Below, in pieces: positions 16,319 through 64,000 of a stretch of 64,000 bases of DNA. The position numbers were made by a program, and so were the translations under genes. The DNA comes from Bugula neritina (taxonomy: Eukaryota > Animalia > Bryozoa). Location of the stretch: assembly GCA_964035545.1 (NCBI GenBank), contig OZ037770.1, positions 372,001-436,000 on the forward strand, read 5' to 3'. Under the pieces are notes generated by a model. That model was not told where the DNA came from. It ran no database searches and saw only the letters and a list, made by a program, of their open reading frames with translations. The stretch's first letter is position 1. Each line of letters starts with the position of its first letter.

Positions 16319-19300
16319 ATGGAGGACTACACTAATATATTAAAGTTAGAAGAGCTGACCATAGAATACCAAAAGAAGGCTGAAACTAGTAGAAACTGGG
16401 TGCACCATCTACAGGTATAGTTTGTTGCTATTTTAGTTAAACAGTTGTTTAGCTATCATAAACATGATATGACATAACATGAAAGTTTATTAGAAGGGTT
16501 AAAACTAACTACAGAGGAGCATGTATGTTGTTGAAGTCGAAGACCAGCTGAAGACAAATTAGACATGTGTATTTTTCTAATGAGTTTATAGGAAGTACAT
16601 TTTATTATTCTGAATAACGACTGCATATTGCTCAGCTTGAAAAAACTGCATCATCCTTGATCTGTAGGCTCATGGACTAGCTAACAGATGTCTGGCTCTA
16701 GAGTTCAGTGAGGAGAGACAGAGGAGAGTCTACCAGATAGAAGACTGTTGGTACGAACGAAGACATCCACTCAGCTATGAGGAACATCAGGAATTGACAA
16801 AGAAACATCTCAAGCTACTGGAGGACTACAGAACTGAGACAACAACTGACTTCAGCTCTATTGACACAAGTAACTTGAAACTTGATAACTATCCTTCAGC
16901 TAATCAGCTCACTGAGTTTAGTAATTCTGTATTTGAATTAAGTCAAAAGTGCAGTGATAACTTTATATCAACATGTAGTAAGTTTATACAGTCCAGTGTT
17001 GATACTTTGAGTACATCAGGTTTAAATATTCCCTGTTCATTTGCTGTGATTGGTCTTGGTTCTGTTGCTCGTGGTACAGCCACTCCATATTCTGACCTAG
17101 AGTATGCCTTTGTCGTTGAGTCAGACTCTCATATTGACTACTTTACTAAACTAGCAGTTGATAGCTACTTTAGAATTGGTAATATGGGAGAGTCACCATT
17201 GAAGGGTTTTAATATTCCTGAACTAGACAAATCATACACAGATAGTGCTACTGTAGGGTTCCGTATTGATGGAATATCCACAAATGCTGGAAATATTCCC
17301 ACAGGGAAAGGAGATGGTAGCAGGGGTTTGATATTGACTGTTGAACAGTTGACTGAACTATACTCTGAGACACTGACTACACCAGCTGGTGATATAGCAG
17401 ATATAGCTGATCTGTTATCTTCTATTGTCATGATATGTGCATATGAAAATGGTGAAATTCTGTTTGACAACACTCTTGAAAACTTTCAAACTATTTTAGC
17501 AGAAAATGTAAACAATTCAGTTGTGATAAACAAACGACTGAAATTATTAAAAACAGATGCTGAATCTTACAATTTTCTCCCAACCTTCAAATCCTTTGGA
17601 CCTCCTGACAACACAAAACTCAAACTTAAAGGTGATATTTTTCGATACCCAACACTGTTAGTTGACCACCTGAGACTGTTGATAGCTTTAGATAAAATGA
17701 CTCCTTGGTCTATAATATGCCACTTGAAAGAGCAGAACTTTGTGACTGACAAACAACTGTTTAGACTAAACCTAATAACAGCTATGGCCATATACATCAG
17801 AACAACTGCATACTTACAATCAGGAACTCAAAAAGATCATTTCTCTTTATATCCTCCCACTGAATGTCACACCAAAGGAATTTATCATTTATCTAGAGAC
17901 ATGTTTGTTCTATTAGCATTTATGATTGTTCCTGTGAAGAAATTTGTTAAAAGAAACTTGAATAATATTAATTGTGAAAGTGAATGGATAGGCTCTGCTG
18001 TTTTGAGAAGACTAGTGAACCAAATTGGTTTAGATAACCCAGGTTTCACATTGAAAATGGAGGTGGAATTTTTTTGTGGAGATTTTGAGCAATCCATTCA
18101 AACTGTTAAAGCAAATTGTGGTGCTGATATATTTGATAAAAATCCTAAAGATTTTGGTGAAACAATCAACAGTTCATATTATTCAGACTCTTTAGTTGCA
18201 TCTCAGGATTTTGAGCATGGAGACAATAATGTGTTAACCGCTCAACTCAAATACATTGAAATGGCTGCATATCTATTGTACTCCTCTAGAAAGTATGATA
18301 GTTGTCTTAAGTATTTTACTTGGTTAGCAGAAAACTGTGTAAAGTCTGCATCTGATAGGTTGAAATGGAAAGTGTTAGCTGCTGACTCCGCCAATCAGCT
18401 TCACAATTACCATGACGTCTTCTCTTTGATTGGTGAAGTTTTGTGTACCATTAGATCAAAGTACAAACTAAAGAATAATCAAACTCTGTACAGATTTGTG
18501 AGAGACCAGGCTAAACACGATCAGCATTCAGCTGAAGACAGAGAGTTGTTTGAAATTGTTGCACAAGCTTTAAGAGTGACTAGCAAAGCTTATGAGAATG
18601 TAAAACATTATGTGCAAGCTGAAGAGTTGGCAAATGCAGCACTCTCACTTTTTGATAGTCTGTATTCCCAAAGGTCAGGGCAGCAATTTGGCAGTCATTA
18701 TGTAGATTTGATAGTTTCCCTTGCTTTGCTACAGTCAGAAAGAGGTGAACATGATGAAGGTGTTGAATACTTGACTCATCATTTAGATAAGTTAAAAGAA
18801 GTTCACACTGACCAGACTAACCACCCAGACATTGCCCTTCTACTGAGTGGTTTAGGTCAACTTTATGAAAAAGCTGAAAATTATGACATCTCCTTAGATT
18901 TCTATAACAGAGCTTTAGCTATGACAAAAAGTTTGTACAGTTTGGATCATGTTGATGTTGCTCAGTGCTATCGGAGAGTTGCAGCTCTACAGGCTGAAAT
19001 AGGTGATTATAATTTATCTTGCAGCAACTATCAAATTGTAGAAAGGTTGTTTGATAAGTTGAAGGTTAATGAGCATGAGAAAGCTGGTCTGTTAGTAGAA
19101 ATTGGTCTTCTTCATTGCTGTAAGAGTGAATATGACTCAGCTCTGTCATATCTTGATTTAGCTCTCAGTATGATAGAGTCTAAAGTAGAAACCATCCACA
19201 TAGATATGGCAGATATAAACTCTGCATATGGTAGAGTTTATAGTAAAATGGGACAAACAGAACTTGCATTAGAATATTACACAAAGTCTCTAGAAATAAC

Positions 19301-22300
19301 CAAAGAAGTTCTGAGTAGTATTGATGGTATTCCATTGTTATCTCAACTCTATGGTGAGATGGGAAAGTTGTCTGTCGAACTGAGCGCAGAGGCTATGATG
19401 TTGAATATTGAGAGAGCTAGTAGAGAGGTGAACAGTGTTAGTCCTGATGTAGCTTCTTGTTATATGAGAGTTGGTAATGTCTATAGAGATATGTGTCTGT
19501 ATGAGCAGTCTTTGCTGTACCTCAATGAGGCATGTGAAATGTTCAGGGCTGTCTATGGCAGTGATGCAGTGCATGCAGATATTGCTAGTAGTTATAACAA
19601 TATTGGTCTTGTGTATAGTGACATGGGTGAATATAGCAAAGCACTAGAGTACTATAGGAAGAGTCTTGAGATGAGACAAGCTGTGTATGGCAGTGATGCA
19701 GTACATGCAGACATTGCTAGCAGTTATAACAATATTGGTAATGTGTATAGTAACATGGGTGAATATAGCAAGGCACTAGAGTACTATAGGAAGAGTCTAG
19801 AGATGCTGTTAGCTGTCTATGGTAATGATGCAGTACATGCAGACATTGCTGGTAGTTATACCAATATTGGTATTGTGTATGGTAACATGGGTGAATATAG
19901 CAAGGCACTAGAGTACTATAGGAAGGGTCTAGAGATGAAACAAGCTGTCTATGGCAGTGATGCAGTGCATGCAGACATTGCTAATAGTTATAACAATATT
20001 GGTGCTGTGTATAGTAACATGGGTGAATATAGCAAGGCACTAGAGTACTATAGGAAGGGTCTAGAGATGCAGCTAGCTGTCTATGGCAGTAAGGCTACAC
20101 ATGCACACATTGCTAGTAGTTATAACAGTATTGGTAGTGTGTATAGTAACATGGGTGAATATAGCAAGGCAATAGAGTACTATAGGAAGGGTCTAGAGAT
20201 GAGACAAGCTGTCTATGGCAGTGATGCAGTGCATGCAGACATTGCTAGTAGTTATAACAATATTGGTATTGTGTATAGTGACATGGGTGAATATAGCAAG
20301 GCAATAGAGTACTATAGGAAGGGTCTAGAGATGAGACAAGCTGTCTATGGCAGTGATGCAGTGCATGCAGACATTGCTAGTAGTTATAACAATATTGGTA
20401 GTGTGTATAGTGACATGGGTGAATATAGCAAGGCACTAGAGTACTATAGGAAGGGTCTAGAAATGAGACAAGCTGTCTATGGCAGTGATGCAGTGCATGC
20501 ACACATAGCTAGTAGTTATAACAGTATTGGTAATGTGTATATTAACATGGGTGAACATTGCAAGGCACTAGAGTACTATAGGAAGGGTCTAGAGATGAGA
20601 CAAGCTGTCTATGGCAGTGAGGCTACACATGCAAACACTGCTGGTAGTTATAACAATATTGGTATTGTGTATAGTAACATGGGTGAATATAGCAAGGCAC
20701 TAGAGTACTATATGAGAGGTCTAGAGATGGAGCTAGCTGTCTATGGCAGTGATGCAGTACATGCAGACATTGCTAATAGTTATAACAATATTGGTATTGT
20801 GTATAGTGACATGGGTGAATATAGCAAGGCACTAGAGTACTATAGGAAGAGTCTTGAGATGAGACAAGCTGTGTATGGCAGTGATGCAGTACATGCAGAC
20901 ATTGCTAGCAGTTATAACAATATTGGTATTGTGTATAATCACATGGGTGAATATAGCAAGGCACTAGAGTACTATAGGAAGGGTCTAGAGATGAGACAAG
21001 CTGTCTATGGCAGTGATGCAGTGCATGCAGATATTGCTAGCAGTTATAACAATATTGGTAATGTGTATAGTAACATGGGTGAATATAGCAAGGCACTAGA
21101 GTACTATAGGAAGAGTCTTGAGATGAGACAAGCTGTCTATGGCAGTGATGCAGTGCATGCACACATTGCTTGTAGTTATAACAATATTGGTGGTGTGTAT
21201 TGTAACATGGGTAAATATAGCAAGGCACTAGAGTACCATAGGAAGAGTCTAGAGATGAGACAAGCTGTCTATGGCAGTGATGCAGTACATGCAGACATTG
21301 CTAGTAGTTATACCAGTATTGGTAGTGTGAATAGTAAGATGGGTGAATATAGCAAGGCACTAGAGTACTATGAGAAGGGTCTAGAGATGAGACAAGCTGC
21401 CTATGGCAGTGATGCAGTGCATGCAGATATTGCTAGTTGTTATACCAATATTGGTAGTGTGTATAGTTACATGGGTGAATATAGCAAGGCACTAGGGTAC
21501 CATAGGAAGAGTCTAGAGATGGTGCTAGCTGTCTATGGCAGTGATGCAGCACATGCCCACATTGCTGGTAGTTATAACAATATTGGTAATGTGTATAGTG
21601 ACATGGGTGAATATAGCAAGGCACTAGAGTACTATAGGAAGGGCCTAGAGATGAGACAAGCTGTCTATGGCAGTGATGGAGTGCATGCACACATTGCTGG
21701 TAGTTATACCAATATTGGTGGTGTGTATAGTAACATGGGTGAATATAGCAAGGCACTAGAGTACCATAGGAAGAGTCTAGAGATGCAGCTAGCTGTCTAT
21801 GGCAGTGATGCAGTGCATGCAGACATTGCTAGTAGTTATAACAATATTGGTGGTGTGTATAGTAACATGGGTGAATATAGCAAGGCACTAGAGTACCATA
21901 GGAAGGGTCTAGAGATGCAGCTAGCTGTCTATGGCAGTGATGCAGTGCATGCAGACATTGCTAGTAGTTATAACAATATTGGTTTTGTGTATAGTAACAT
22001 GGGTGAATATAGCAAGGCACTAGAGTACTATAGGAAGGGTCTAGAGATGAGACAAGACGTCTATGGCAGTGATGCAGTGCATGCACACATTGCTGGTAGT
22101 TATAACAATATTGGTAATGTGTATAGTGACATGGGTGAATATAGCAGGGCACTAGAGTACTATAGGAAGGGTCTAGAGATGAAACAAGCTGTCTATGGCA
22201 GTGATGCAGTGCATGCAGACGTTTCTAGTAGTTATTACAATATTGGTGTTGTGTATAGTAACATTGGAGAATATAGCAAGGCACTAGAGTACTATAGGAA

Positions 22301-23471
22301 GGGTCTAGAGATGCAGTTAGCTGTCTATGGCAGTGATGCAGTGCATGCCCACATTGCTGGTGGTTATAACAATATTGGTGGTGTGTATAGTAACATGGGT
22401 GAATATAGCAAGGCACTAGAGTACTATAGGAAGAGTCTAGAGATGCAGCTAGCTGTCTATGGCAGTGATGCAGTGCATTCAGACCTTGCTAGTAGTTATA
22501 ACAATATTGGTATTGTGTATAAATACATGGGTGAATACAGCAAGGCACTAGAGTACTATGGGAAGAGTCTAGAGATGAGACAAGCTGTCTATGACAGTGA
22601 TGCAGTGCATGCACACATTGCTAGTAGTTATAACAACATAGCCTCAGTTCATCACAAACTCTCAGACTACACCTCATCCCTCCATTACTATAGCAAAAGC
22701 ATAGACATGCATAAAGCAGTCTATGGTGAAGGAACCAATCATAATAACATTGCTGAAAGTTATAGAGGTATTGCTGATGTGTACACAGATACAGGTGAAT
22801 ATACAAAGTCACTACATTATCTCACCTTGTCTCTAGACATGACTAAAGCTATACATGGTGACAATACCACTCACATAGATATAGCAGACACTTACCATAA
22901 ACTGGGTAGACTGTATCATAATGCAGGTCAATATACACACTCAGTACACTGCTATAACATGGCCCTTGTAGAGAGAGATAGGTGTAATACTGCTCATCTC
23001 CCTCTATATACAGCTGTGTTAGTCAGTCTCTCTCAGACTGTAATCTCATCATCAGACTACAAACACGCTAAGGGTCTCCTACTACTCGCTCTCAAACATT
23101 CACCTACTGACTACTGTAAGGATACTCGGGCTAATATCTGTCAACTCTTAGGACAGTGTTGTCTCCACTTACATCAGTACAGAAAGTGTTGGAAATATTT
23201 ATATTCAGCTCTCTGTTACTATGAGTCACTTCCTTCCTCCAACTGGAAGATGAAATCTCTAGCTCAGGTTCATTTGTACATCTCCCACTTGCTCTTACAT
23301 CTGGGTCATGTTTCACAGGCTATAGAACACTCTGAGTTAGCTTTTGATTTTGTAGAAAGTGTTTTAGTTGACAGAGATAACATAACTCCTGAATTTACTA
23401 GACTGTATACAGACATTACACACATGATTCTTGGTTTATATTCAACTCTTACTCTGTATATAGATATATAG
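16319..23471 (+). CDS. Nucleotidyltransferase (DUF294/GlnD-like, Pol-beta fold)-TPR array protein, copy 1, intact, 2299 aa
   Basis: Coding exon 1 is 16319-16414 (MEDYTNILKLEEL...WVHHLQ, GT donor). Exon 2 is 16668-23471 (AG acceptor, in frame with ORF 16794..23471). The NTase motif FAVIGLGSVARGTATPYSDLEYAFV is at ~17040-17115, with a candidate third Asp in FRID (17268-17270) and a helical DUF294_C-like segment at ~17620-17820. Degenerate TPRs follow, then 23 near-identical 44-aa TPR units and degenerate C-terminal TPRs. Confidence 0.9.
19548..22583 (+). repeat. Coding 132-bp tandem repeat, 23 units (AVYGSDAVHADIASSYNNIGxVYSxMGEYSKALEYYRKxLEMxx)
   Basis: (22584-19548)/132 = 23 exactly; there are no indels between units. 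Confidence 0.95.
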
Positions 23472-28341: not shown

Positions 28342-28580
28342 GACTACTAGCACTATTAAACTAGACTATCTAACTACAACATAGTTTCTACCTGCTGGAC
28401 CTCCATGCCTCAGACACAGCAACTTTCATCAAGTCTCTCTCTGCAATCACCAACTTCAAGGCATCCAAAGCTGAAAACTCAACTCCAAACCCTTCAGTAT
28501 GAGTCACTCTGAGTATATTCTGATCATAAGTCATTTCTGGAGTCTATGAGAGAAGTGAGACAATTTTTCTAAATGTAGAT
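28342..28580 (-). pseudogene. TIPRL: Duplicated, inactivated TIPRL exon 2 with part of intron 2
   Basis: 28392-28574 is colinear with 13259-13441. The acceptor AG is mutated to AC, a CAG>TAG stop is present, and the donor is retained. Intron homology extends to ~28342; the other TIPRL exons are not seen. Confidence 0.9.
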
Positions 28581-31936: not shown

Positions 31937-34900
31937 ATGGAGGACTACAAAGACATATTAAAGTTAGACGAACTGACCATAAAATACCAAAAAATGGCGG
32001 AGTCTAGTAGAAACTGGGTGCACCATCTGCAGGTAGCAATTACTACTATTTGATTCAAATTAATGGTGTACCTGTCATAAACATGATATGACATAACATA
32101 AAATGTTCATAGAAGGTTTAAAACTAAATACAGAAAAGCATGTCTGTTGTTGAAGTTGAAGACTGCAGCTGAAGACAAAGACATATGTATTTTTCTAATG
32201 AGTTTATAGGAAGTATACATTTTATTATTCTGAATGAGGACTGCATTTTGCTCAGCTTGAAAAAACTGTATTTTCTTTTTTATCTATAGGCTCATGGACT
32301 AGCTAACAGATGTCTGGCTCTAGAGTTTAGTGAAGAGAGACAGAGGAGAGTCTACCAGATAGAAGACTGTTGGTATGGAGGAAGACATCCAATCAGCTAT
32401 GAGGAACATCAGAAATTGACAAAGAAACATCTCAAGTTGCTGGAGGATTTTAGAGACGAGACAACAACTGACTTCAGCTCTCTTGACACAAGTAACTTGA
32501 AACTTGATAACTATCCTTCAGCTAGTCAGCTCACTGAGTTTAGTAATTCTGTATTTGAATTAAGTCAAAAGTGCAGTGATAACTTTATATCAACATGTAG
32601 TAAGTTTATACAGTCCAGTGTTGATACTTTGAGTACATCAGGTCTAAATATTCCCTGTTCCTTTGCTGTGATTGGTCTTGGTTCTGTTGCTCGTGGTACA
32701 GCCACTCCATATTCTGACCTAGAGTATGCCTTTGTCGTTGAGTCAGACTCTCATATTGACTACTTTACTAAACTAGCAGTTGATAGCTACTTTAGAATTG
32801 GTAATATGGGGGAATCACCATTGAAGAGTTTTAATATTCCTGAAATAGACAAATCATATGCAGATAGTGCTACTGTAGGCTTCCGTATTGATGGAATATC
32901 CAAAAATGCTGGAAACATTCCAACCGGGAAAGGAGATAGTAGCAGGGGTTTGATATTGACTGTAGAACAATTGACTGAACTATACTCTGAGACACTGACT
33001 TTACCAGCTGGTGATATAGCAGATATAGCTGATCTGTTATCTTCTATTGTCATGATCTGTGCATATGAAAATGGTAAAATGCTGTTTGACAAGACTCTTG
33101 AAAACTTTCAAACTATTTTAGCAGAAAATGTGAACAATTCAGTTGTGATAAACAAACGACTGAAATTATTAAAAACAGATGCTGAATCTTACAATTTTCT
33201 CCCAACATTCAAATCCTTTGGACCTCCTGACAATACAAAACTCAAAGTTAAAGGTGATATTTTTCGATACCCAACACTGTTAGTTGACCACCTGAGACTG
33301 TTGATAGCTTTAGATAAAATGACTCCTTGGTCTATAACATGCCACTTGAAAGAGCAGAACTATGTGACTGACAAACAACTGTTTAGACTAAACCTGATAA
33401 CAGCTCTGGCCATATACATCAGAACAACTGCATACCTACAATCAAGAACTCAAAAAGATCATTTCTCTTTATATCCTCCCACTGAATGCCACACCAAAGG
33501 AATTTATCATTTATCTAGAAACATGTTTGTTCTATTAGCATTTCTGATTGTTCCTGTGAAGAAATTTGTTAAAAGAAACTTGGATAATTTTAATTGTGAA
33601 AGTGAATGGATAGGCTCTGCTGTTTTGAGAAGACTAGTGAACCAAGTTGGTTTAGATAACCCAGGTTTCACATTGAAAATGGAGGTTGAATTTTTTTGTG
33701 GAGATTTTGAGCAATCCATTCAAACTGCTAAAGCAAATTGTGGTGCTGACATATTTGATAAAAGTCCTAAAGACTTTAGTGAAACTATCCGTAGTTCAAG
33801 TGATTCCAATTCCTCAGTTACATCTGAATATTGTAAACAGGAAGTTAATAATGTTTCTGCTGCTTCATCCAAATACATCGAAATGGCTGCATATCTATTG
33901 TACTCCTCTAGAAAGTATGATAGCTGTCTGAAGTATTTCACTTAGTTAACAGAAAACTGTGCAGACTCTGCATCTGATAGGTTAAAATGGAAAGTGTTAG
34001 CAGCTGACTCAGCCAATCAGATTCACAATTATTATGAGGTCTTCTCTTTGATTGGTGAAGTTTTGTATACCATCAGATCAAAGTACAAATTGAAGATTAG
34101 TCAAACTCTGTACAGATTTGTTAGAGATCAGGCTAAACACACTCAGCATTCAGCTGAAGACAGAGAGCTGTTTGAAATTGTTGCACAAGCTTTTAGAGTG
34201 ACTAGCAAAGCCTACAAGAATGTGAAGCATTATGTGCAAACTGAAGAGTTGGCAAATGCAGCACTCTCACTTTTTGACAGTCTGTATTCCCAAAGATCTG
34301 GGGAACAATTTGGCAGTCATTATGTAGATTTGATAGTTTCCCTTGCGTTGTTACAGTCAGAAAGAGGTGAACATGATAAAGGTGTTGAATATTTGACTCA
34401 TCATTTAGATAAGTTGAGAGAAATTCACACTGACCAGACTAACCACCCAGACATTGCCCTTCTATTGAGTGGTTTAGGTCAACTTCATGAAAAAGCTGAG
34501 AATTATGACATCTCCTTAGATTTTTACAACAGAGCTTTAGCTATGACAAAAAGTTTGTACAGTTCAAATCATGTTGATATTGCTCAATGTTATCAGAAAA
34601 TTGCAGCTGTGCATGCAAAAATGGGTGATTATAGTTCATCTTTCAGCAACTATCAAAGTGTAGAAAAGTTGTTTGAGAGTTTGAAGATTAGTGAGCATGA
34701 GAAAGCTTTTCTGTTGGTGGAAATTGGCCTTCTTCATTGTTGTAAGAGTGAATATGACTCAGCTCTGTCATATCTTGATTCAGCTCTCAGTATGATAGAG
34801 TCTAAAGTAGAGACCACCCACATAGATATGGCAGATATAAACTCTGCATATGGTAGAGTTTATAGTGAAATGGGGCAGACAGAACTTGCATTAGAATATC

Positions 34901-36981
34901 ACACAAAGTCTTTAGTGACAACCGTAAAAGTTCTGAGTAGTATTGATGGTATTCCATTGTTATCTCAACTCCATGGTGAGATGGGAAAGTTGTCTGTGAA
35001 ACTGAGTGCAGAGGCTATGATGTTGAATATTGAGAGAGCTAGTAGAGAGGTGAACAGTGTTAGTCCTGGTGTAGCCTCTTGTTACATGAGAGTTGGTAAT
35101 GTCTATGATGATATGTGTCTATATGAGCAGTCTTTGGTGTATCTCAATAAGGCATGTGAGATGTTCAAGGCTGTCTATGGCAGTGATGCAGTGCATGCAC
35201 ACATTGCTATTGGTTATAACAATATTGGTAATGTGTATAGTAAGATGGGTGAATATAGCAAGGCACTAGAGTACTATAGGAAGGGTCTAGAGATGCAGCT
35301 AGCTGTCTATGGCAGTGATGCAGTGCATGCCCACATTGCTAGTAGTTATAACAATATTGGTAATGTGTATAGTAACATGGGTGAATATAGCAAGGCACTA
35401 GAGTACTATGAGAAGGGTCTAGAGATAGAGCTAGCTGTCTATGGCAGTGATGCAGTGCATGCACACATTGCTAGTAGTTATAACAATATTGGTGTTGTGT
35501 ATAGTAACATGGGTGAATATAGCAAGGCACTAGAGTACTATAGGAAGGGTCTAGAGATGAGACAAGCTGTCTATGGCAGTGATGCAGTGCATGCAGCCAT
35601 TGCTAGTTATTATACCAATATTGGTAGTGTGTATAGTGACATGGGTGAACATAGCAAGGCACTAGAGTACTATAACAAGGGTTTAGAGATGCAGTTAGCT
35701 GTCTATGGCAGTGATGCAGTGCATGCCCACATTGCTAGTAGTTATAACAATATTGGTAATTCGTATAGTGACATGGGTGAATATAGCAAGGCACTAGAGT
35801 ACTATGAGAAGGGTCTAGAGATAGAGCTAGCTGTCTATGGCAGTGATGCAGTGCATGCCCACATTGCTAGTAGTTATAACAATATTGGTAATGTGTATAG
35901 TAAAATGGGTGAATATAGCAAGGCACTAGAGTACTATAGGAGGGGTCTAGAGATGAGACAAGCTGTCTATGGCAGTGATGCAGTGCATGCAGACATTGCT
36001 AATAGTTATACCAATATTGGTGTTGTGTATAGTAACATGGGTGAATATAGCAAGGCACTAGAGTACTATAGAAAGGGTCTAGAGATGCAGCTAGCTGTCT
36101 ATGGCAGTGATGCAGTGCATGCACACATCGCTAATAGTTATAACAACTTAGCCTCAGTTCATCACAAACTCTCAGCCTACACCTCATCCCTCCACTACTA
36201 TACCAAATGTATAGAGATGTTTAAAGCAGTCTATGGTGAAGGAACCAACCATAATCACATTGCTTTTTGTTATAGAGGTATTGCTGATGTGTACACAGAT
36301 ACAGGTGAATATATAAAGTCACTACATTATCTCACCTTGTCTCTAGACATGACTAAAGCTATACATGGTGACAATACCACTCACATATATCTAGCAGACA
36401 CTTACCATAAACTGGGTAGACTGTATCATAACACAGGTCAATATACACACTCAGTACACTGCTATAACATGGCCCTGGTACAGAGAGATAGGTGTAATAC
36501 TGCTCATCTCCCTCTATATACAGCTGTGTTAGTCAGTCTCTCTCAGACTCTAATCTCATCATCAGTCTACAAACACGCTAAGGGTCTCCTACTACTCGCT
36601 CTCAAACATTCACCTACTGACTACTGTAAGGATACTCAGGCTAATATCTGTCAACTCTTAGGACAGTGTTGTCTCCACTTACATCAGTACAGGAAGTGTT
36701 GGAAATATTTATATTCAGCTCTCTGTTACTATGAGTCACTTCCTTCCTCCAACTTGAAGATGAAATCTCTAGCTCAGGTTCATTTGTACATCTCCTACTT
36801 GCTCTTACATCTGGGTCATGTTTCACTGGCTGTAGAACACTCTGAGTTAGCTTTAGTTCTTGTAGAAAGTGTTTTAGTTGACAGAGATAACATAACTCTT
36901 GAACTCACTAGACTGTATACAGACATTACACACATGACTCTTGGTTTATATTCAACTCTTACTCTGTATACAGATATTTAG
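31937..36981 (+). pseudogene. NTase-TPR copy 2: colinear paralog with 7 core TPR units and one in-frame nonsense codon (583-aa NTase-only product, or 1595 aa if read through)
   Basis: Exon 1 is 31937-32032 and exon 2 is 32290-36981. ORFs 32416..33945 and 33994..36981 are in the same frame. TAG at 33943-33945 aligns to TGG (Trp) in copies 1 and 3. The length difference to copy 1 is exactly 16 x 44 aa, and the NTase motif is intact. Confidence 0.85.
35170..36093 (+). repeat. Coding 132-bp TPR tandem repeat, 7 units
   Basis: (36094-35170)/132 = 7. Confidence 0.95.
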
Positions 36982-49829: not shown

Positions 49830-49980
49830 ATTACTACTACCACTGATACTAGTACTACAACTAGTACTAGTACTGCTACTAGTACTAGTACTACTACTAC
49901 TACTACTACTACTAATAGTACTGTTACTACTACTACTACTAGTACTACTACTAGGTCTACTACTGTACCAGTACAACTAC
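49830..49980. repeat. Imperfect (CTA)n / CTAGTA microsatellite
   Basis: Direct observation. Confidence 0.85.
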
Positions 49981-52900: not shown

Positions 52901-54517
52901 GTTACCAGTGTTGGGTCAACTTTCAGAATAAAGAATAAATATAATTATAAAGATAAATGGATAAAAATTCCAATCATGGTTTAATGTGCCTATTTTAAGC
53001 TGTTAATTTAATTACTATAATATAAGTGCTCAAAATACAACTTTTGATTTTCATAATTATGTTTTAATTTAATACAGATACCATAGTATCATATACAGTA
53101 GAGTCAGTTGTATCTTATTTAATAATGAAGTAACTTATTGGAGCTTTCACAGTTATTAATTATTTACTTGTTAGTCTTTGAACTAGGACAATGTTTGAAA
53201 CTTGAAGTAGAATGAAGTTTGATTTCAGTTACCGCAATGGTATCTGCAGTCACAATAGGAATACGCATATAACTATGTTTATATTTGTGAAAAATATATA
53301 GTCAAAACTAGATAAGGTAATAGTAATTATAATTGGTTTCACTTTTAATATATTCCTATAAACTGGAAAATAGACAGAAGCATTTAATCATGAAAGTAAA
53401 CCTAGTGGAAGTAAATCAATTCACTAAGTATAGTAAAATATTTACTATTCAGTAAGTTTATTTACTTTAGTTAATTGTACTTGATTATTTCTGTCGGTTT
53501 TTCAGTTGATTTTTCTACCTTTTGCTATAGCATATCAAACTACCACAAAGTCATGCTTCCGTATTACAATTATAAACATAGTGTTACTGTGTAATGTTAT
53601 AGTAATGTAATAGTAATATTTGGATCATTGTAAGTATTTCTGTTGTTGTACTGATTGATAAATATTTTTTAGCTTGCATGGATATTTGCAACGATCAAGA
53701 TGTCATTTGAACCTGGACTGGAATAAAGATGGCAAATCGAGAAGCTAGCTACAATTATTCTGCAGAAAGAAACTTGGTAAGCAAAAATAAGCTGCAGCAT
53801 TAAGCAGTAAGCAATATGACGATGAACTTTGCTTGATTTTGATTGACCTTAAAATATCTGGTCACCTTTCACCAACGTGGTCCTGCGCGGGTGGCGGGTG
53901 ACCTTAAAATGTCTGTTGCACGTAAAATAAATTTTGTGACAGTCAAAAGTATGCTGATCTTTTTCGTATTTCAGTGCATCGGTGTCTTAGCTTAAGAGCT
54001 GAACCTAACAATTATGATCTAAAGCTATTTTTTAATAGAAAGTGATTTTACTGTCTTTCTGATTATTCTTGGTTTTTCAGCTTGATGAATTGAATAAATG
54101 GATTTGATTTCGGGTATTATGTAATGGATGAAAGAAATTTTTCTTAAATTTGTACTGAGCAATTTTTGCTATTGCTATGATGTTTAGTGATAAAATTGCA
54201 CCCTTAATAACCCTGAAAACTTTCATTACTAGCATTTGTTTATGCTCATTTTTAGGAAATTAAAATGAAGACACAACTCACCGATGTTATCTCACTGTGC
54301 CTGCATGCAGTTTATCTAAAAAGGTACTCCTATTAGCTGGCTCTTGCCCAATACCTGGTTGTCTCTGTAACTATTTTTTGCTCGCAGATGAGTTTTTTGA
54401 ACTTGACATTTTATTGATTTTGAAAGTTATAGTGAGCTTTGAACTTGCTAGCATCGTTTTTAAAGACTTGCTGCAGTTTTTATCAACATTTTTTCAGTCA
54501 ATGGTGTTAGTTTGGAA

Positions 54518-54772
54518 GCTCTCTCACTCCTCTCTCTGTCTCTTTCTCCCACACCTTCCACTCAACCTCTCTCTCTTTCTCCCCCTCTCTCCCACCTTCT
54601 CTCTCTCCCACTCTCCGTCTCTCCCACCTTCTCTCTCTCCTAACCTTTCTCTCTTCCCTTTTCCACTATCTCTCTGACTCTCTCCCTTTCTCTCTTCTAC
54701 CCCATCTCTCTTCCATCCTCTCTCCTAACCTTTCTCTCCCACCCCTCCCTCTCCCACTCTCTTTCTCTCTCT
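54518..54772. repeat. CT-rich polypyrimidine low-complexity tract
   Basis: Direct observation. Confidence 0.85.
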
Positions 54773-56304
54773 AGTTTGCATGGCTTTACCCAATTTTGGT
54801 TTATTTTTTTATTTTGTTTCAGAGTATCCAAAAGGAAAGCTAAAATTTATTTAATATATATTATACCAACTTGAGCTTTACATATAATATCAAATAAATG
54901 CTGTGTTTTGTTAAAACAATGTTTGCAACTTTGTAGTATATTCAAATTCATAATTTATTTGTAGAGTCACACAACAAGACACTACTCTGACACACTCACA
55001 AGTTGCCACTGATCCAGCAGTATAGATGATTGTTTTCTCCACTGGCTATGCTGTCACGCTTTACTGTTGTGGTGTTTGAAACAAACCAATTGTGTAGTGT
55101 CCTTTATAATAAATAGTAAAATTTCATAAATTTGGTTTTATTTAGTTTGCTTACTGACACTCTGCTGCCAATTTGTTCATAACTGTCATAATATATATCA
55201 ATTAGCAATTTAGCATTTACCGACATTGCCACACTGCGTTTGTGTTGTCACATATTCCAACAGCGATGAATCACCCATCCTTAGTGTACTCTTTAGCACT
55301 TGTTTGTCACTGTTTTTTTATCTTCAAGACCATTTTAGTATCACTCGGTGCATTGCAAGTTTTATTTTGCACTGGCTGCACTCAAAAAACCATGACTAAG
55401 AAACTGAGTGCACTAGCTTTACACATACCGACAAAAACAGTTAAAATACATTTAGCCAGGACATTATCGTAAGAACCCTCAAGCGTCAAGGTTCCATTCT
55501 CATCTACTCTCACATAATATTATAGCTATTTTTACAAACACACGGTATAAAATGTTGCTTTCTTTATACTACTAACTCTCTCCTAGAAAGGGTGAAAGAG
55601 GTATGCTTTTATATATTATAACTTTGTTGATTTATACTGTTACTTTGAATATTTTAATAATTATAAAACAAGCAATTTATCAAATTCTTTTATGTACTTT
55701 TCTGTGTTTAATTTGCTCTTATTCTATCATATTTTAATCATTTTGTTTTGTGAAAATTGTAGTTTCACGGTGTAAAAGGTGTAAATGGTGTGAACAGTGT
55801 AAATCAATAAACTATCTACACTAAAACATACACCCGTATGGAACTTTCATAGCAAACTAGGAGGGCAGTTACAAATTGTTTGCCTACGCAGATTAGGGTG
55901 AGAAAAAAAGTGGGAAATGAAAGCTGTTTTTAATACCAACTACACTTAGTTTTTATTGAATGAAAAACAAAGTGAAATCATTAGTTATCCGTTAAATGAC
56001 TAAATCATTGTTTATAAAGATGAAACACAAATAATCTTATAATATGCTAATGAAATTTGGCTTTCAAATAGCTTTTTTCTGTATATTTGTTGAGGAAGTT
56101 TATCTTCAACAAAACTTCGTAGCTGTTGAATATGTGGAGAGTATTTTATATTGCATAAATTTATAGAGTAAAAGGTTCTCATCAAACTTTTACAACTTAG
56201 CTCATCGACGGTTTAAAAGTGTGAGTCACCCTTCACACTAGAGTTTTATAAAGTTTTAATGAATGTGCAGTATTTTATAAAATATTGTGTGTCTCGTAAA
56301 TTTA

Positions 56305-57271
56305 GGGGAAACCTGGGTGATATGAACCACCCGGGTGATATGGACCATGCATGTTTTGCAGTATCCAAGGTTACCAGAAAGTTGAAAAGTGTCTTATTCT
56401 TCAGAAATAGGAATATCTAACTTCCTGTCTACATATTTTAAACTTGTCTCTTCGTCTTAAAGAATAGAGACACATTTTCTCTTTTTGCTCATTTTCTTAT
56501 AACTTTTCACAACTTTTGTGGATATATTTTCATTGAAAAAAATTGCCTGAAGTAAGGGGCCTGTATCTACAGATAATGTGTGGCAGGTGTGTATAAATAT
56601 CCGAACAGTATATATAATTCTTGCCCGCTCTCTGTCTGTAGAAAGTCAAAATTTTTGGTGACATGATTTCTGGGTGATATGGACCGCCACTTGGGGGTGA
56701 TATGGACCGTGTACCATATTACTCAGCAAATTGAATTTTTCTCTTCATATACTTGTTTGAAGAAAAATAATACTATTTCTTAAGGATTTCTAACAATGAT
56801 GAAGCATTAAACCCCTAAATATTGATTAGACAACATTATAGCTATAGTTGCTGTAAAATGGGTGCTTGAAATATTCATACTCGTGCAATGCATTTTAGAT
56901 GCCAAGATATTCTTCCAAAAAAATTGAAATGCTTTGAGTTAGGAGGCACTAAGAGAAGCTGTTACACACTTATTTTAGATCTATTGTTTTATGTTACTTT
57001 TTAATATAGCAAAATGCATTTTCAACACAAAAAAGCTGACTTTATGTGATGGAGTCTGTGGTGGCCCATATCACCCGAAATTTCAAAAAATCTCCGGGTG
57101 ATATGGTCCACCAATTTTCATTCATAGCTCAGTCAAGCATCTGTATAGGAGCTTCAAATATTGTTTGTATGTCAGTAGAGATAGCACCCACATGTTGAAA
57201 TACTAATTTTCAATCAAACATTGTCAGTATGGGCTGTGAGCTTAAGTGGTCCATATCACCCAGGTTTCCCC
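56305..57271. mobile_element. Non-autonomous DNA transposon (Tc1/mariner-pogo-type MITE), 967 bp, TA target-site duplication
   Basis: 26-bp TIR GGGGAAACCTGGGTGATATG(A/G)ACCAC at both ends (1 mismatch), flanked by TA at 56303-56304 and 57272-57273. Internal copies of GGGTGATATGGAC lie at ~56333, 56672, 56696, 57064 (inverted) and 57096; there is no transposase ORF. Confidence 0.88.
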
Positions 57272-60204
57272 TAGCTATTTCTACCTTTTCAGTGAGATTG
57301 GAGTAAACACACCTCAAAATTCACATCTGGTATCACATTGATTTATCGCAAGTCAAAGTACACCTACTAACTCTTCCTTCCTTAATACCTGCTTGATTTT
57401 GCACTTCTACTCATTTCATATACCTAACATTTCTCTTGCAGATGAATTACATCTTTTAAGTTGTAAAAGCCTTAAATAGCATGAAATTAATGAGGTTTAA
57501 ACCGTGGCCACACTAACTATTGATGCGTTTATTGATGGGTTAAATTACACGAAAATATTGTCTCTTTCTTTTTAGTTTCACCTAAAGTATTACATACTAT
57601 TGATGGAGGCTGTGCTGAAGTTTTTGGGTGATGATTTGTCAATAATTTTCCAGAGAAGATGATGCCACGGTGGCTGGCATCATTATGCAGTTTCCAAATT
57701 TCTTTCGGCTTTGCTCTAGTGAAAATGTTGGAAAACAATCAACAAAAAGGTTTGTACCATAAACGAAGTTATTGTGTGCGTGTTGTCAAAGCATAAAGTG
57801 TGCTGGAAATTTTTGGGTTTCTGTTGAGATGCGTTTTTGCTTTTCCTGCATGAAAAAAGTTCCAGTTTCAGTTAATATCACTAGCGGAGTGCCCACCTAT
57901 ATTTTAAATCATATTGATGCATAAGTTCTTTTTGTAATATTAAAAGTATAACTTGCTTAATTGCTATTCAATGCCCTTTGAAGTTTCCAACTGTAATTAA
58001 TTAGTTGATTTGGCAGCATAGTATCGATGATTGATGAAGGCAGCCGATATAATTATAAGCATAAATATCTATATCTACATGAAGATGTCATTCCCAATGA
58101 TTGTTATTCTGAAATCAGCTGATTAAGTTATCACAAACTAAACATTTTGACCAGCGGCTTGCAATGCAACTCGGTGAAATTTCAGACCTAGATAAATTGA
58201 ATTTCTTACTGAAAATCGTGAAGGTATTAAAGTTTAAAGTGAAAGTTTAAAGGGTCATCTCTCTGCGAATTCTAATAGCATGGTGCCAATTAGACTTGAA
58301 AAAATTTCAAGGCACTACAAAGCACTAAGCCCATTCTTACAAGTAGTTTCCAAGTGCACTGGAATTTCAGTTTACTTGTCATTGTATAGAATCCTGATCT
58401 ACACTATATAGCATTCACTATTGCCTGCTTCTTCTAAGCATCTATAATGTAATAACTACAGTTTGCTTTGAGAAGTGAATTTCTACTTGGTATTTTGTCC
58501 TTATCGTTCCGTTGTTTGCCAGTAGTCTTAATTTAATGGATTTTCCCTTTTCAAAAGTGGTTGTGACAATCAAAACACATCATGCAGCCTGCAACTACAC
58601 AATCAGTCAGTAATTTCTTCCATTAAAGTAGCTCTTCTGGTTACTCTTGCTCACCTAAAAGCCTGAGCCTCATTCAAATTGCAATTTTTTAGAGTTGTTA
58701 GTTTTTCATGCAGTCTTTCATTTTTTTTTTGTTAGGCACAAAATTAGTATTCACTAGACCTAATCTTTCATCTGCATGTATGCCTATTGTTTGTTCATTA
58801 AAGAAAAACCTCTGCTGAGTATTGAACTAATAATGAAAATAAATTCCCTAAACTAAAAGTAGCAGTGTGATTTTGGTATTACAATTAGTTGTTAGCATAG
58901 AGTCAAGTTATTGACAGGAATTTTCAAATTGAAATGAATGAATTTCATTGTAAGTCAGCAAGATTTAGTCTAAGTAAACATAGCATTACATCGTGTTTTA
59001 TTTAGCATTTGCAGAAGGCAACATATATTTTAAGGATTATTGTAAACTTAAATGTAATTTTAAGTACTTTCCATGTTATTGTAGATGGTCTTGTTCTTTG
59101 GGATGGATGTGACAACTCCTTGTGTCAAGCTTAACTGATTGACTACTGAATCCCAATCATATGTTTTGCCAAAAAATGTGAAAATGGCGTGCATGTCTAC
59201 TTTATTTGAGAAAATATTAAAAATACTTTTGAAACTTCATCTAGCCAAACAATACAACAGTTTCATTTCATTAAAAAATATCATTTGCACAAAAATGTAT
59301 TATGTAATCAAACAATTTCTAGAAAAAAAGTGCTTTCCTCCAGTTTTGCTAATGAACTACATTTTTCATTATATGCTTGTCTTTATAATTTTATTAATTG
59401 TTTTTTCTGGTGAGTCAATTAAAGTCAATTCAACCTAGAAAAGTCTGAATTTCAGACTTAATTTCAAGCTAGAATATTCACATTTTTAGGTCTGCGTTTG
59501 CAAACATTGTTGTGTTACTTTACTTTTTATATTTTTTGAAATAAATATCTTTTTAGCTTGTGCCTATTCATGGTTAGAATAGTATAATAATATTTAACTT
59601 TTCTTCAATTTCAATAGATGAAAATGTTGATCAGTTGGAGTATTCAGTTTAGCTGAATTTTACTTGCTTCTGCGAAAACAATCTTTTGGAGTTGTCTGCC
59701 CTCTCTTTAGGTAATTTTTTGACCTATGGTCAACGCAATAATGTGGTGGTTCGTGGAACTACCAGCAGCACAACATGTAGGGTCGCGTAATTGACCCGGA
59801 ACAATGGATAGCCAATTAGCGTAGTTGATAGTTAGCAGCAATTGTAGTTTCCCGCTGCTAACTCAGTCGAAGCTAGAGTGTGAAATAGATTAGATGTGTA
59901 ACTTGTTGGAAATAATGTATCGTGTTTTTATAATGTATAATTGTGTATAAAATATACTCGTTCACTCGACTTAGCCTGGTGCAGTTCTATACTAGATAAA
60001 TAGACTCTCTGGATAGCATATCAACCCAAAACAGAAAATTATAACAATAATTATAACTTTTTAAAGATGCTTGTGAACCTAACAATATAGCATAACTATC
60101 AAACCACATTATTCAATATCTGCATAAAATTTAGCCGATAAGCTGCCACCCAATGAGCTTGAAAAGATATTAGAATTCTAGCTCAGTGCTGCCATCAATG
60201 TAGA

Positions 60205-60293
60205 TATTTATAATGATATAAAGCCAAAACTCATTATTTATAATGATATAAAGCCAAAACTCATTATTTATAATGATATAAAGCCAAAACTCA
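60205..60293. repeat. 30-bp tandem repeat x3 (TATTTATAATGATATAAAGCCAAAACTCAT)
   Basis: Direct periodicity. Confidence 0.9.
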
Positions 60294-60629
60294 ATATTGC
60301 ATGAAATTATCTAACCATTCCTGACAAAGAATCGAGATAATAACTCCAAAGTTGGTCATTTGAAACCACAGCAATAATACTTTAATCCTTATAATTGTCA
60401 GGTTTAATTTTATACCAAGCCCCAATAAGTATATATCACTATGACAACACAGCCTAAGCACCTCCAATGCAAGAAATTTAGTATTGTGGTGCTGCAAATC
60501 CTCCAGTTACAAATGAGTAGAGCACTCATGATTATTGGTCTACCATAATGTTTATTTAGTTTTAAGGACTAGCATAAATGCTATTATATGTGGGAGGTAT
60601 TTGAAAAGCTTCCAACTCCATCTTCAACT

Positions 60630-60809
60630 ATGGGCTATTATAATTATGCCGATAAACGAGATACTACACTCAGACTGCCCTGTTATAGTACTATGATTGG
60701 CTACTGCAAAATTTTTGCCGATAGACAACATTTATTTATGATGTAATGTATCTCGTATTGGTACATAAGTGTTATGTCTGAGGACGAGATACTGTGAAAT
60801 TATGCCCTG
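60630..60809 (-). mobile_element. Probable hAT-like DNA transposon terminus abutting truncated copy 3
   Basis: The segment ends ...AATTATGCCCTG (reverse complement CAGGGCATAATT) exactly at the homology breakpoint. The subterminal motif ACGAGATAC is repeated (~60656, ~60748 inverted, ~60784). No clean matching second end was found. Confidence 0.45.
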
Positions 60810-63800
60810 ATAATATGCCACTTGAAAGAGCAGAACTATGTGACTGACAAACAATTGTTTAGACTAAACCTAATAACAGCTATGGCCATATACATCAGAA
60901 CAACTGCATACTTACAATCAGGGACTCAAAAAGATCATTTCTCTTTATATCCTCCCACTGAATGCCACACCAAAGGAATTTATCATTTATCTAGAAACAT
61001 GTTTGTTCTATTAGCATTTCTCATTGTTCCTGTGAAGAAATCTTTTAAGAAAAACATGAATTATATTCATTGTGAAAGTAAATGGATAGGCTCTGCTGTT
61101 TTGGGAAACCTTGTGAACCAAGTTGGTTTAGATAACCCAGGTTTCACATTGAAAATGGAGGTGGAATTTTTTTGTGGAGATTTTGAGCAGTCTATACAAA
61201 CTGTTAAAGCAAATTGTGGTGCTGATATATTTGATAAAAATCCTAAAGATTTTGGTGAAACAATCAACAGTTCATATTATTCAGACTCTTTAGTTGCATC
61301 TCAGGGTTTTGAGCATGAAGACAATAATGTGATAACCGCTCAACTCAAATACATTGAAATGGCTGCATATCTATTGTACTCCTCTAGAAAGTATGGTAGT
61401 TGTCTTAAGTATTTTACTTGGTTAGCAGAAAACTGTGTAGACTCTGCATCTGATAGGTTGAAATGGAAAGTGTTAGCAGCTGACTCAGCCAATCAGCTTC
61501 ACAATTACCACGAGGTCTTCTCTTTGATTGGTGAAGTTTTTTCTACCATCAGATCAAAGTACAAATTAAAGATTAATCAAACTCTGTACAGATTTGTGAG
61601 AGACCAGGCTAAACAGGATCAGCATTCAGCTGAAGACAGAGAGTTGTTCAAAATTGTTGCACAAGCATTAAGAGTGACTAGCAAAGCTTATGAGAATGTT
61701 AAACATTATGTGCAAGCTGAAGAGTTGGCAAATGCAGCACTAGCACTATTTGACAGTCTGTATTCCCAAAGATCTGGGCAACAATTTGGCAGTCATTATG
61801 TAGATTTGATAGTTTCCCTTGCTTTGTTACAGTCAGAAAGAGGTGAACATGATGAAGGTGTTGAGTATTTGACTCATCATTTAGATATGTTAGTAGAAGT
61901 TCACACTGACCATACTAACCACCCAGACATTGCCCTTCTACTGAGTGGTTTAGGTCAACTCTATGAAAAAGCTAATAATTATGACACCTCCTTAGATTTT
62001 TACAACAAAGCTTTAGCTATGACAAAAAGTTTGTACAGTTCAAATCATGTTGATATTGCTCAATGTTATCAGAGAATTGCAGATCTGCATGCAAAAATGG
62101 GTGATTATAGGTCATCTTTCAGCAACTATCAAAGTGTAGAAAATTTGTTTGAGAGTTTGAAGATTAGTGAGCATGAGAAAGCTTCTCGGTTGGTGGAAAT
62201 TGGTCTTCTTCATTGCTGTAAGAGTGAATATGACTCAGCTCTGTCAAAGCTTGACTCAGCTCTCAGTATGATAGAGTCTAAAATAGAGACCACCCACATA
62301 CATATGGCAGATATAAACTCTGCATATGGTAGAGTTTATAGTGAAATGGGGCAGACAGAACTTGCATTGGAATATCACACAAAGTCTCTAGAAATAATCA
62401 AAGAAATTATGAGTAGTATTGATGGTATTCCATTGTTTTCTCAACTCCATGGTGAGATGGGAAAGTTATCTGTAAAACTGAGTGCAAAGGCTATGATGTT
62501 GAATATTAAGAGAGCTAGTAGAGAGGTGAACAGTGTTAGTACTGATGTAGCTTTTTGTTACATGAGAGTTGGTAATGTCTATAGAGATATGTGTCTACAT
62601 GAGCAGTCTTTGCTGTATCTAACTAAGGCATGTGAGATGTTCAGAGCTGTCTATGGCAGTGATGCAGTGCATGCAGACATTGCTAGTAGTTATAACAATA
62701 TTGGTAGTGTGTATAGTGACATGGGTGAATATAGCAAGGCACTAGAGTACTATAGGAAGGGTCTAGAGATGCAACTAGCTGTCTATGGCAGTGATGCAGT
62801 GCATGCAGACATTGCTAGTAGCTATAACAATATTGGTAATGTGTATAGTGACATGGGTGAATATAGCAAGGCACTAGAGTTCTATAGGAAGGGTCTAGAG
62901 ATGAGACAAGCTGTCTATGGCAGTGATGCAGTGCATGCACACATTGCTAGTAGTTATAACAATATTGGTAATGTGTATAGTGACCTGGGTGAATATAGCA
63001 AGGCACTAGAGTACTATAGGAATAGTCTAGAGATGAAGCTAGCTGTCTATGACAGTGATGCAGTGCATGCAGACATAGCTAGTAGTTATAACAATATTGG
63101 TAGTGTGTATAGTGACATGGGTGAATATAGCAAGGCACTAGAGTACTATAGGAAGGGTCTAGAAATGCAGCTAGCTGTCCATGACAGTGATGCAGTGCAT
63201 GCAGACATAGCTAGTAGTTATAACAATATTGGTATTGTGTATAGATACATGGGTGAATATAGCAAGGCACTAGAGTACTATAGGAAGGGTCTAGAAATGC
63301 AGCTAGCTGTCCATGACAGTGATGCAGTGCATGCAGACATAGCTAGTAGTTATAACAATATTGGTATTGTGTATAGTGACATGGGTGAATATAGCAAGGC
63401 ACTAGAGTACTATAGGAAGGGTCTAGAGATGCAACTAGCTGTCTATGGCAGTGATGCAGTGCATGCCCACATTGCTAGTAGTTATAACAATATTGCTGGT
63501 GTGTATAGTGACATGGGTGAATATAGCAAGGCACTAGAGTACTATAGGAAAGGTCTAGAGATGAGACAAGCTGTCTATGGCAGTGATGCAGTGCATGCAG
63601 ACATTGCTAGTAGTTATAACAATATTGGTGGTGTGTATAGTGACATGGGTGAATATAGCAAGGCACTAGAGTACTATAGGAAAGGTCTAGAGATGAGACA
63701 AGCTGTCTATGGCAGTGAGGCTACACATGCACACATTGCTAGTAGTTATAACAGTATTGGTAGTGTGTATAGTAACATGGGTGAATATAGCAAGGCACTA

Positions 63801-64000
63801 GAGTACTATAGGAAAGGTCTAGAGATGAGACAAGCTGTCTATGGCAGTGATGCAGTGCATGCAGACATTGCTAGTAGTTATAACAACATTGGTGTTGTGT
63901 ATCAAAACATGGGTGAATATAGCAAGGCACTAGAGTACTATAGGAAGCGTCTAGAGATGCAGCTAGCTCTCTATGGCAGTGATGCAGTGCACCCACACAT
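60810..64000 (+). pseudogene. NTase-TPR copy 3: 5'-truncated (no NTase), open frame running off the window end, >=10 core TPR units
   Basis: Homology to copy 1 starts abruptly at 60810 (= 17712, codon ~381). There is an in-frame TGA upstream at 60795 and the first ATG is at 60882. The offset to the array start is identical to copy 1 (1836 nt). 132-bp units run from 62646 to 63965 and continue. The ORF track omits this frame, apparently because it reaches no stop in the window. Confidence 0.85.

What the first reader, a model, noticed from the sequence alone, without database searches (positions are those of the whole stretch)
16319..64000. Tandem family of nucleotidyltransferase-TPR proteins: candidate undescribed variable sensor-effector (immune-receptor-like) system in an animal genome
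Seen: three paralogs share an N-terminal domain, complete in copies 1 and 2, carrying hG[GS]x10DhE (GLGSVARGTATPYSDLE) and a later FRID. This is followed by a helical segment, degenerate TPRs and an internally homogenised 132-bp TPR array of 23, 7 and >=10 units. The cluster shows birth-and-death features: a nonsense codon, a truncation and mosaicism. Known: this motif defines the Pol-beta nucleotidyltransferase superfamily, and the GSxAR...YSD form is typical of bacterial GlnD/GlnE/DUF294 enzymes, which nucleotidylate proteins. The same fold makes second messengers in cGAS/OAS/CD-NTases. High-internal-conservation repeat arrays with variable copy number are the recognition modules of fungal NLR/HET receptors. 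Inference: the TPR solenoid recognises non-self ligands and activates the NTase (protein AMPylation/UMPylation or signal nucleotide synthesis). That would make it an NLR-like receptor with no NACHT/NB-ARC domain (no P-loop is visible).
Basis: partly seen in the sequence, partly recalled or inferred. Interest (0 to 1): 0.92.

Follow-up and report, generated by a model that had tools for sequence, protein, structure and literature searches.

The report
Animal DrrA-like enzyme with variable TPRs
A marine invertebrate, probably a bryozoan, carries about 60 transcribed genes that join a conserved enzyme shaped like the Legionella protein-modifying effector DrrA to a fast-diversifying repeat-built binding groove, which points to an undescribed and untested recognise-and-tag defence system in animals.

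Summary
Three paralogs lie in the window: copy 1 intact (23 x 132-bp TPR units), copy 2 with a premature stop (7 units), copy 3 cut off by a young transposon and lacking the enzyme core (10 units). The genome has about 57 near-complete loci (69 matches). The N-terminal module folds like the Legionella AMPylase DrrA/SidM (Z 26) and GlnE (Z 20-21), not cGAS/OAS. D143/E145/D201 are 98-99% conserved and the core is under purifying selection (dN/dS 0.15-0.18). Known TPR ligand-groove positions diversify (pN/pS 2.1 and 2.6 in two clades; framework 0.5-0.6). The family is spliced and transcribed, with no signal peptide or P-loop. Kin: bryozoans, Owenia, a large amphioxus expansion, and, among bacteria, mainly intracellular lineages (Chlamydiae, Rickettsiales, Amoebophilaceae); a Hydra copy nests inside Rickettsiaceae. 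Best reading: cytosolic protein AMPylases whose TPR groove picks variable, probably foreign, proteins. Activity, targets and immune role are untested. DUF294-TPR is described as a putative chlamydial effector family; I found no paper on the animal expansions. The scan noted this family elsewhere in this genome.

The parts
14305..14454 (+). probable 5' untranslated exon of copy 1 (approximate start)
   Evidence: RNA-type contig piece 14305-14454 and joints from 14454 in 4 runs
14975..15105 (+). second probable 5' untranslated exon
   Evidence: GT..AG joint 14454 to 14975 and joints from about 15105
16319..16414 (+). copy 1 first coding exon, 32 codons from ATG, hydrophilic, no signal peptide
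16668..23471 (+). copy 1 large coding exon, 2267 codons plus stop
16668..17987 (+). DrrA/GlnE-like module: N-terminal helices, NTase core (G131-S132, D143, E145, D201) and HEPN-like helical domain (K321, R326, R378); numbering from the exon start
   Evidence: AlphaFold pLDDT 92; Z 26 to 6yx5, 21 to 1v4a; conservation
17955..19547 (+). all-alpha solenoid with degenerate TPRs, no beta-sheet, no P-loop
   Evidence: Pfam
19548..22583 (+). copy 1 array, 23 units of 44 aa, hypervariable at TPR groove positions
22584..23471 (+). C-terminal divergent TPR-like cap shared by the three copies
31937..32032 (+). copy 2 ATG exon
32290..36981 (+). copy 2 large exon, NTase module 94% identical to copy 1, broken by a stop at 33943-33945; array of 7 units at 35170-36093
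58800..60809 (.). end of a young high-copy repeat (probable DNA transposon; left end not found) that abuts truncated copy 3
   Evidence: 79 matches, 825 candidates in the genome
60810..64000 (+). copy 3, 5'-truncated (no NTase core), mosaic of copy-1-like and copy-2-like blocks, array of 10 units at 62646-63965; runs 853 bp beyond the window

Best explanation
An expanded family of cytosolic protein nucleotidyltransferases, most likely AMPylases of the DrrA/GS-ATase type, used in a biological conflict. The enzyme module is held constant. The TPR solenoid is diversified by groove substitutions, unit gain and loss, and exchange between paralogs, so that each paralog binds a different, probably foreign, protein (from intracellular bacteria, viruses or parasites). 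I think it most likely that the bound protein, or its complex, is itself the substrate, and that binding also licenses catalysis, as Rab1 does for DrrA. Shown by computation: fold, catalytic residues, selection pattern, copy number, transcription, phylogeny. Inferred: AMP transfer to protein, non-self ligands, substrate recruitment, defensive role.
For: Best PDB fold match is DrrA 16-352 (Z 26.0, 320 residues, rmsd 4.1), then GlnE domains (21.2, 19.6); the next non-DrrA match is below Z 9. The family profile finds DrrA first among solved structures, E 3e-8. Acidic triad and basic residues conserved 96-99% in 103 homologs. Core dN/dS 0.15-0.18 in three clades. Groove positions 2, 5, 9, 12, 13 (PMC1261162) have pN/pS 2.08 and 2.55, step-count p 0.007 and 0.0002, against 0.5-0.6 elsewhere. 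All 40 window units differ in protein sequence. Paralog lengths mostly differ by near-whole multiples of 44 aa. Named bacterial kin are mainly intracellular lineages, where DUF294-TPR proteins are putative host-directed effectors (PMC4209131). TPRs select the substrate in the AMPylase FICD (PMC8065156); DrrA is activated by its own target (PMC7815794).
Against: No activity, ligand or induction data. DrrA D249, listed as a metal ligand in one review (PMC8097203), aligns with S/T here. The D201 to D150 match rests on position, not on a superposition I could inspect. Bacterial CBS-DUF294 proteins with no known substrate are also structurally close (TM about 0.65). Recombination can inflate selection estimates, and the window's groove signal was seen before the literature positions were confirmed; the C5/C7 clade is the independent test.
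Confidence: 0.45

Rival explanations
1. Sensor-switch: the TPR solenoid holds the enzyme off; binding a non-self ligand releases it, and it AMPylates a fixed host protein (for example a small GTPase or a death or trafficking regulator) to stop infection or kill the cell.
For: A strongly conserved enzyme core across paralogs fits one constant host substrate; array evolution matches fungal NLR TPRs (PMC4986451); the DrrA N-domain is cytotoxic when expressed alone (PMC8097203).
Against: No switch NTPase or oligomerisation domain. The same layout in bacterial effector candidates is more simply read as targeting plus enzyme.
Confidence: 0.25
2. The enzyme makes a diffusible nucleotide signal (cyclic or oligonucleotide) after ligand binding, analogous to cGAS, OAS or CD-NTases.
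For: Same superfamily; the products of close DUF294 relatives are uncharacterised.
Against: CD-NTase CdnC scores only E 0.5 in Foldseek and no cGAS or OAS is in either top list; no Mab-21 or OAS Pfam match in 103 members; the solved relatives DrrA and GlnE modify proteins.
Confidence: 0.1
3. Allorecognition or another self-versus-kin conflict (colony fusion, gamete or selfish toxin-antidote system) drives the diversification, not microbes.
For: Colonial animal (inferred); fungal high-identity repeat arrays serve allorecognition (PMC4986451).
Against: The largest expansion found is in solitary amphioxus; the proteins are predicted cytosolic; loci are spread over at least nine contigs.
Confidence: 0.12
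4. Housekeeping or neutral: a domesticated enzyme or scaffold whose arrays vary only by slippage and gene conversion.
For: Tandem arrays are intrinsically unstable; groove positions are surface-exposed and tolerant.
Against: Non-synonymous change at groove positions exceeds the synonymous rate about two-fold in two clades, which relaxed constraint alone does not give; about 60 copies; patchy distribution in animals.
Confidence: 0.08

Closest known systems
Legionella DrrA/SidM AMPylase domain (PDB 6yx5, Pfam SidM_N PF20879)
   Same: Whole module superposes (Z 26): N-terminal helices, GS-x10-DxD/E core, C-terminal HEPN-like bundle; K, R and P of the helical-domain motif align.
   Different: 15% identity; no GEF or P4M domain; fused to a TPR solenoid; animal-encoded, spliced and multi-copy; substrate unknown.
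GlnE/GS-ATase and GlnD/DUF294 (PF03445, PF10335)
   Same: Fold (Z 20-21); weak DUF294 match in 93 of 103 homologs.
   Different: Those are bacterial metabolic regulators; no CBS, ACT or HD domains here.
Neochlamydia NEX2 family (F-box, DUF294, TPR; PMC4209131) and its Rickettsiales and Amoebophilaceae kin
   Same: Same NTase family by profile, C-terminal TPR arrays of variable length, lineage-specific expansion.
   Different: Bacterial putative secreted effectors with N-terminal F-box or OTU domains; here host-encoded with nothing N-terminal to the enzyme.
Fungal NLR/HET receptors with high-internal-conservation TPRs (PMC4986451)
   Same: Concerted evolution, unit-number variation and diversifying selection on the concave face.
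   Different: No NACHT/NB-ARC switch; the enzyme is fused straight to the solenoid.
Metazoan AMPylase FICD/HYPE
   Same: AMP transferase whose TPRs select the substrate (PMC8065156).
   Different: Unrelated Fic fold, two TPRs, single conserved ER gene.
Amphioxus proteins auto-named 'Protein-PII uridylyltransferase N-terminal domain-containing' or 'TTC28'
   Same: Same family and architecture, heavily expanded: the top 120 of 865 hits are nearly all named Branchiostoma; best Atlas structure match TM 0.83.
   Different: Database labels only; I found no functional or comparative study.

Membership tests
Pol-beta nucleotidyltransferase superfamily | G[GS]-x9-13-D-h-[DE] motif | tested here: met
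   G131 99%, S132 99%, D143 99%, E145 98% of homologs
Pol-beta nucleotidyltransferase superfamily | third carboxylate after the core motif | tested here: met
   D201 98% conserved; equivalence to DrrA D150 inferred from flanking aligned blocks
DrrA/GS-ATase protein AMPylases | NTase core plus C-terminal HEPN-like helical bundle in one module | tested here: met
   Z 26.0 over 320 residues to 6yx5; residues 281-435 match DrrA 209-345 and HEPN domains
DrrA/GS-ATase protein AMPylases | transfers AMP to a protein Tyr/Ser/Thr | not testable with these tools
   needs biochemistry
DrrA/SidM proper | Rab1 GEF and P4M domains | tested here: not met
   rest of the protein is TPR or alpha solenoid
NLR/STAND receptors | central P-loop NTPase (NACHT/NB-ARC) | tested here: not met
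   no Pfam hit among listed families, no Walker A, no beta-strand in residues 430-960
NLR/STAND receptors | C-terminal repeats with diversifying ligand face | tested here: met
NLR/STAND receptors | ligand-triggered oligomerisation and cell death | not testable with these tools
   needs experiments
cGAS/OAS/CD-NTase | Mab-21/OAS-type two-lobe architecture | tested here: not met
   CdnC E 0.5; none in the VIA top 50; no Pfam match
MNT-HEPN toxin-antitoxin RNases | conserved R-x4-6-H RNase motif in HEPN | tested here: not met
   R378 is conserved but the following H is at most 41% across homologs and absent in copy 1
Neochlamydia NEX2 | DUF294 NTase followed by TPR array | tested here: met
Neochlamydia NEX2 | N-terminal F-box or OTU domain | tested here: not met
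   the enzyme module starts at residue 1 of the large exon; F-box present in bacterial P0123

The most novel reading that the evidence does not exclude
Bilaterian animals hold a third class of protein AMPylase, descended from or shared with endosymbiont effectors, and bryozoans and amphioxus have independently expanded it into a repertoire of NTPase-free intracellular immune receptors that recognise microbial proteins through shuffled TPR grooves and disable or flag them by AMPylation.
Probability: 0.4. Interest if true: 0.9.

Novelty: new variant of a known kind. Interest (0 to 1): 0.76.

Why it matters
A 2021 review lists only two metazoan AMPylase classes, FICD and SelO (PMC8097203). An animal family of DrrA-type enzymes would be a third, and AMPylation has so far been a pathogen weapon, not a host defence. 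The constant-enzyme, variable-groove design without a STAND NTPase would be a simpler kind of intracellular receptor-effector, found in two distant phyla. The claim can be tested directly: the enzyme module is a soluble domain of about 440 residues with defined catalytic residues.

Tried and rejected
Bacterial contamination: rejected; the genes have spliced GT-AG introns and sit on 14-36 Mb contigs beside TIP41 and a GPCR-like gene. cGAS/OAS and HEPN RNase readings: rejected by fold and motif tests. A hidden P-loop in the middle region: none. Viral origin: no Foldseek match at E below 0.001. One clade holding the bilaterian sequences and the Hydra protein: rejected, p-AU 5e-10 (this group was named after the tree was seen). 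CpG hypermutation as the cause of groove variation: unlikely, 0.1-0.4 CpG per unit. Allele-level array variation between individuals could not be tested: the best outside matches are only 77-91% identical, so orthology is unclear. A genome search with 39000-58800 returned no score, so that interval is only partly annotated. The spliced model was examined exon by exon; the joined protein was not built or searched. Copy 2 was left broken and only its separate pieces were searched. Ten literature searches found no description of the animal family; subscription journals are mostly not covered. My notebook entry calls the copy 2 stop TGA; it is TAG.
Full report
OBSERVATION. The window holds three paralogs on the + strand. 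Copy 1 has a 32-codon ATG exon (16319-16414) and one 2267-codon exon (16668-23471). RNA-type contigs from three of four independent studies skip exactly the 253-nt GT-AG intron between them, and further joints define upstream exons at about 14305-14454 and 14975-15105. These contigs mix paralogs and alleles and the runs are only guessed to be RNA, so this shows that the family is spliced and transcribed, not the level of this copy. Copy 2 (31937-36981) is 92% identical in DNA over its 5' part but has a TAG at 33943-33945. Copy 3 starts at 60810, exactly at the end of a young repeat with 79 scored matches in the genome, and lacks the first 348 codons of the large exon. The arrays have 23, 7 and 10 full 132-bp units. 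Copy 3 alternates between copy-1-like and copy-2-like blocks (40 runs against 75.8 expected). The spliced model was handled exon by exon and the joined step was left out.

FAMILY SIZE. A profile search of the 216-Mb genome gives 69 matches, about 57 covering nearly the whole enzyme module, mostly inside open frames of 860-2267 codons, clustered on contigs C6, C5, C2 and C7. Open-frame lengths of the eight nearest paralogs imply about 5, 5, 6, 9, 11, 14, 17 and 17 units (inferred from length, arrays not read).

THE ENZYME. Pfam gives only weak DUF294 and SidM_N hits. An AlphaFold model from 103 homologs is confident (pLDDT 92). Its best match among 48,161 solved chains is the AMPylase domain of Legionella DrrA/SidM (Z 26.0, 320 residues, rmsd 4.1), then the two GlnE domains (21.2, 19.6); the next non-DrrA chain scores 8.5. 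Foldseek returns the same proteins, with CD-NTase CdnC at E 0.5. The family profile finds DrrA at E 3e-8 and aligns both the core and the helical domain. DrrA uses D110, D112 and D150 (PMC7815794). Here D143, E145 and D201 are 98-99% conserved, as are K321, R326 (96%) and R378 in the HEPN-like bundle. The core motif and the third Asp are kept in 53 of 54 fetched loci, some fetched twice; my pattern found no motif in L023. The core is under purifying selection in three separate clades (dN/dS 0.17, 0.15, 0.18). The HEPN-like part lacks the RNase histidine. Residues 430-960 model as a pure alpha solenoid. No signal peptide and no clear membrane segment is seen.

THE REPEATS. All 40 units in the three arrays differ in protein sequence and are as alike between genes as within them (90-92% DNA), the mark of concerted evolution. 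Variation is concentrated at unit positions 11, 14, 17, 21, 24 and 25, which are TPR positions -1, 2, 5, 9, 12 and 13. Positions 2, 5, 9, 12, 13, 33 and 34 are the published concave ligand-binding set (PMC1261162). With positions 2, 5, 9, 12, 13 only, pN/pS is 2.08 in the window and 2.55 in 61 units of a distant clade on C5/C7, against 0.52 and 0.59 for other positions. Counting distinct mutational steps gives ratios of 2.1 and 1.9 (p 0.007 and 0.0002). These simple tests do not model recombination. Unit position 43 also varies strongly and is not explained by the groove. The pattern matches fungal NLR TPR arrays (PMC4986451).

KIN AND ORIGIN. 984 clusters at 50% identity match the module. Named animal kin are the bryozoan Watersipora, the annelid Owenia, a very large Branchiostoma expansion and Hydra; one close homolog comes from a sample labelled BRYA. 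I infer that the host is a bryozoan; this is not confirmed. Among 185,579 prokaryotic genomes, one conserved peptide pattern found 46 loci. Those named to family are Parachlamydiaceae, Rhabdochlamydiaceae, Rickettsiaceae, Holosporaceae, Amoebophilaceae and Legionellaceae; the rest are unclassified Bacteroidota, Alpha- and Gammaproteobacteria. Many carry their own 42-44-aa homogenised TPR arrays of 4-24 units. One has an F-box, as in the Neochlamydia NEX2 family of 50 F-box-DUF294-TPR putative effectors (PMC4209131). In a 57-sequence tree the bryozoan-type genes form one group (100/100) joined by Owenia (98/98). Amphioxus lies between them and the bacteria, and the bilaterian-versus-bacteria split has moderate support (87/83). 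The Hydra gene sits on a 64-Mb chromosome beside a hAT transposase and nests within Rickettsiaceae (99/95); forcing it in with the bilaterians is rejected. So at least one recent bacterium-to-animal transfer is indicated. The bilaterian genes may be one old gain with many losses, but the tree is unrooted and direction is not shown.

MECHANISM. The computed pattern is a fixed, apparently active enzyme fused to a groove under diversifying selection, in a birth-and-death family. The solved relatives of the module modify proteins, so AMPylation is the likeliest chemistry (inference). Diversifying selection on a cytosolic binding surface implies a moving target, most simply proteins of intracellular microbes (inference). 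Whether the groove brings the substrate or releases the enzyme cannot be read from sequence. I favour substrate capture with target-dependent activation (0.45), because TPRs select the substrate in FICD (PMC8065156), DrrA is activated by its own target (PMC7815794), the bacterial kin with the same layout are putative effectors, and no switch NTPase is present.

NOVELTY. The domain and the DUF294-TPR layout are known, and databases auto-label the amphioxus proteins. Ten literature searches found no account of the animal family, and a review names only FICD and SelO as metazoan AMPylases (PMC8097203). It is not an NLR and not a cGAS-like receptor by the tests above, though its repeats evolve like NLR sensors. 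Other windows of this genome were flagged for the same family, and one follow-up reached the same DrrA reading; these are not independent support. Verdict: real, a new variant of a known kind, interest 0.76.

Noticed in passing
window 13242-13427 (-) and 28375-28560 (-): An exon of a TIP41/TIPRL gene lies head-to-head with copy 1 (Pfam TIP41); a 94% identical copy lies upstream of copy 2, so the duplicated segment included part of this neighbour.
   Followed up: partly
window 56305-57271: A 967-bp element with terminal inverted repeats beginning GGGGAAACC and TA on both sides, probably a MITE.
   Followed up: partly
window 59743-60045: About 300 bp inserted in the high-copy repeat and absent from its other copies; possibly a solo LTR.
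   Followed up: no
window 47299-48261 (+): Decayed reading frames that look like a non-LTR retrotransposon by eye; no convincing Pfam hit.
   Followed up: partly
window 4496-5833 (-): Single-exon 445-aa ORF with a weak rhodopsin-family GPCR match, E 0.009.
   Followed up: no
L110:10001-15457 (Hydra vulgaris chromosome, P0007): Uninterrupted NTase-TPR-ankyrin gene nested among Rickettsiaceae sequences beside a hAT transposase: a probable recent transfer from an endosymbiont.
   Followed up: partly
P0008 (Bacteroidota-like by the tree), 2128 aa: The same NTase and TPRs followed by a NACHT domain: a relative that does carry a STAND NTPase.
   Followed up: no
L105:1-11293 and P0340, P0355 (Branchiostoma): Amphioxus members lie next to an ankyrin-CARD gene, and two carry CARD domains themselves; several carry two or three NTase modules.
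   Followed up: no
ESM Atlas cluster, 61 members: A DUF294 cluster that is 75% eukaryotic, commonest phylum Ciliophora from only four records, resembles the module (TM 0.76 by its own length).
   Followed up: no
array unit positions 43-44: A linked RQ/QL dimorphism with high non-synonymous diversity outside the canonical groove; unexplained.
   Followed up: no
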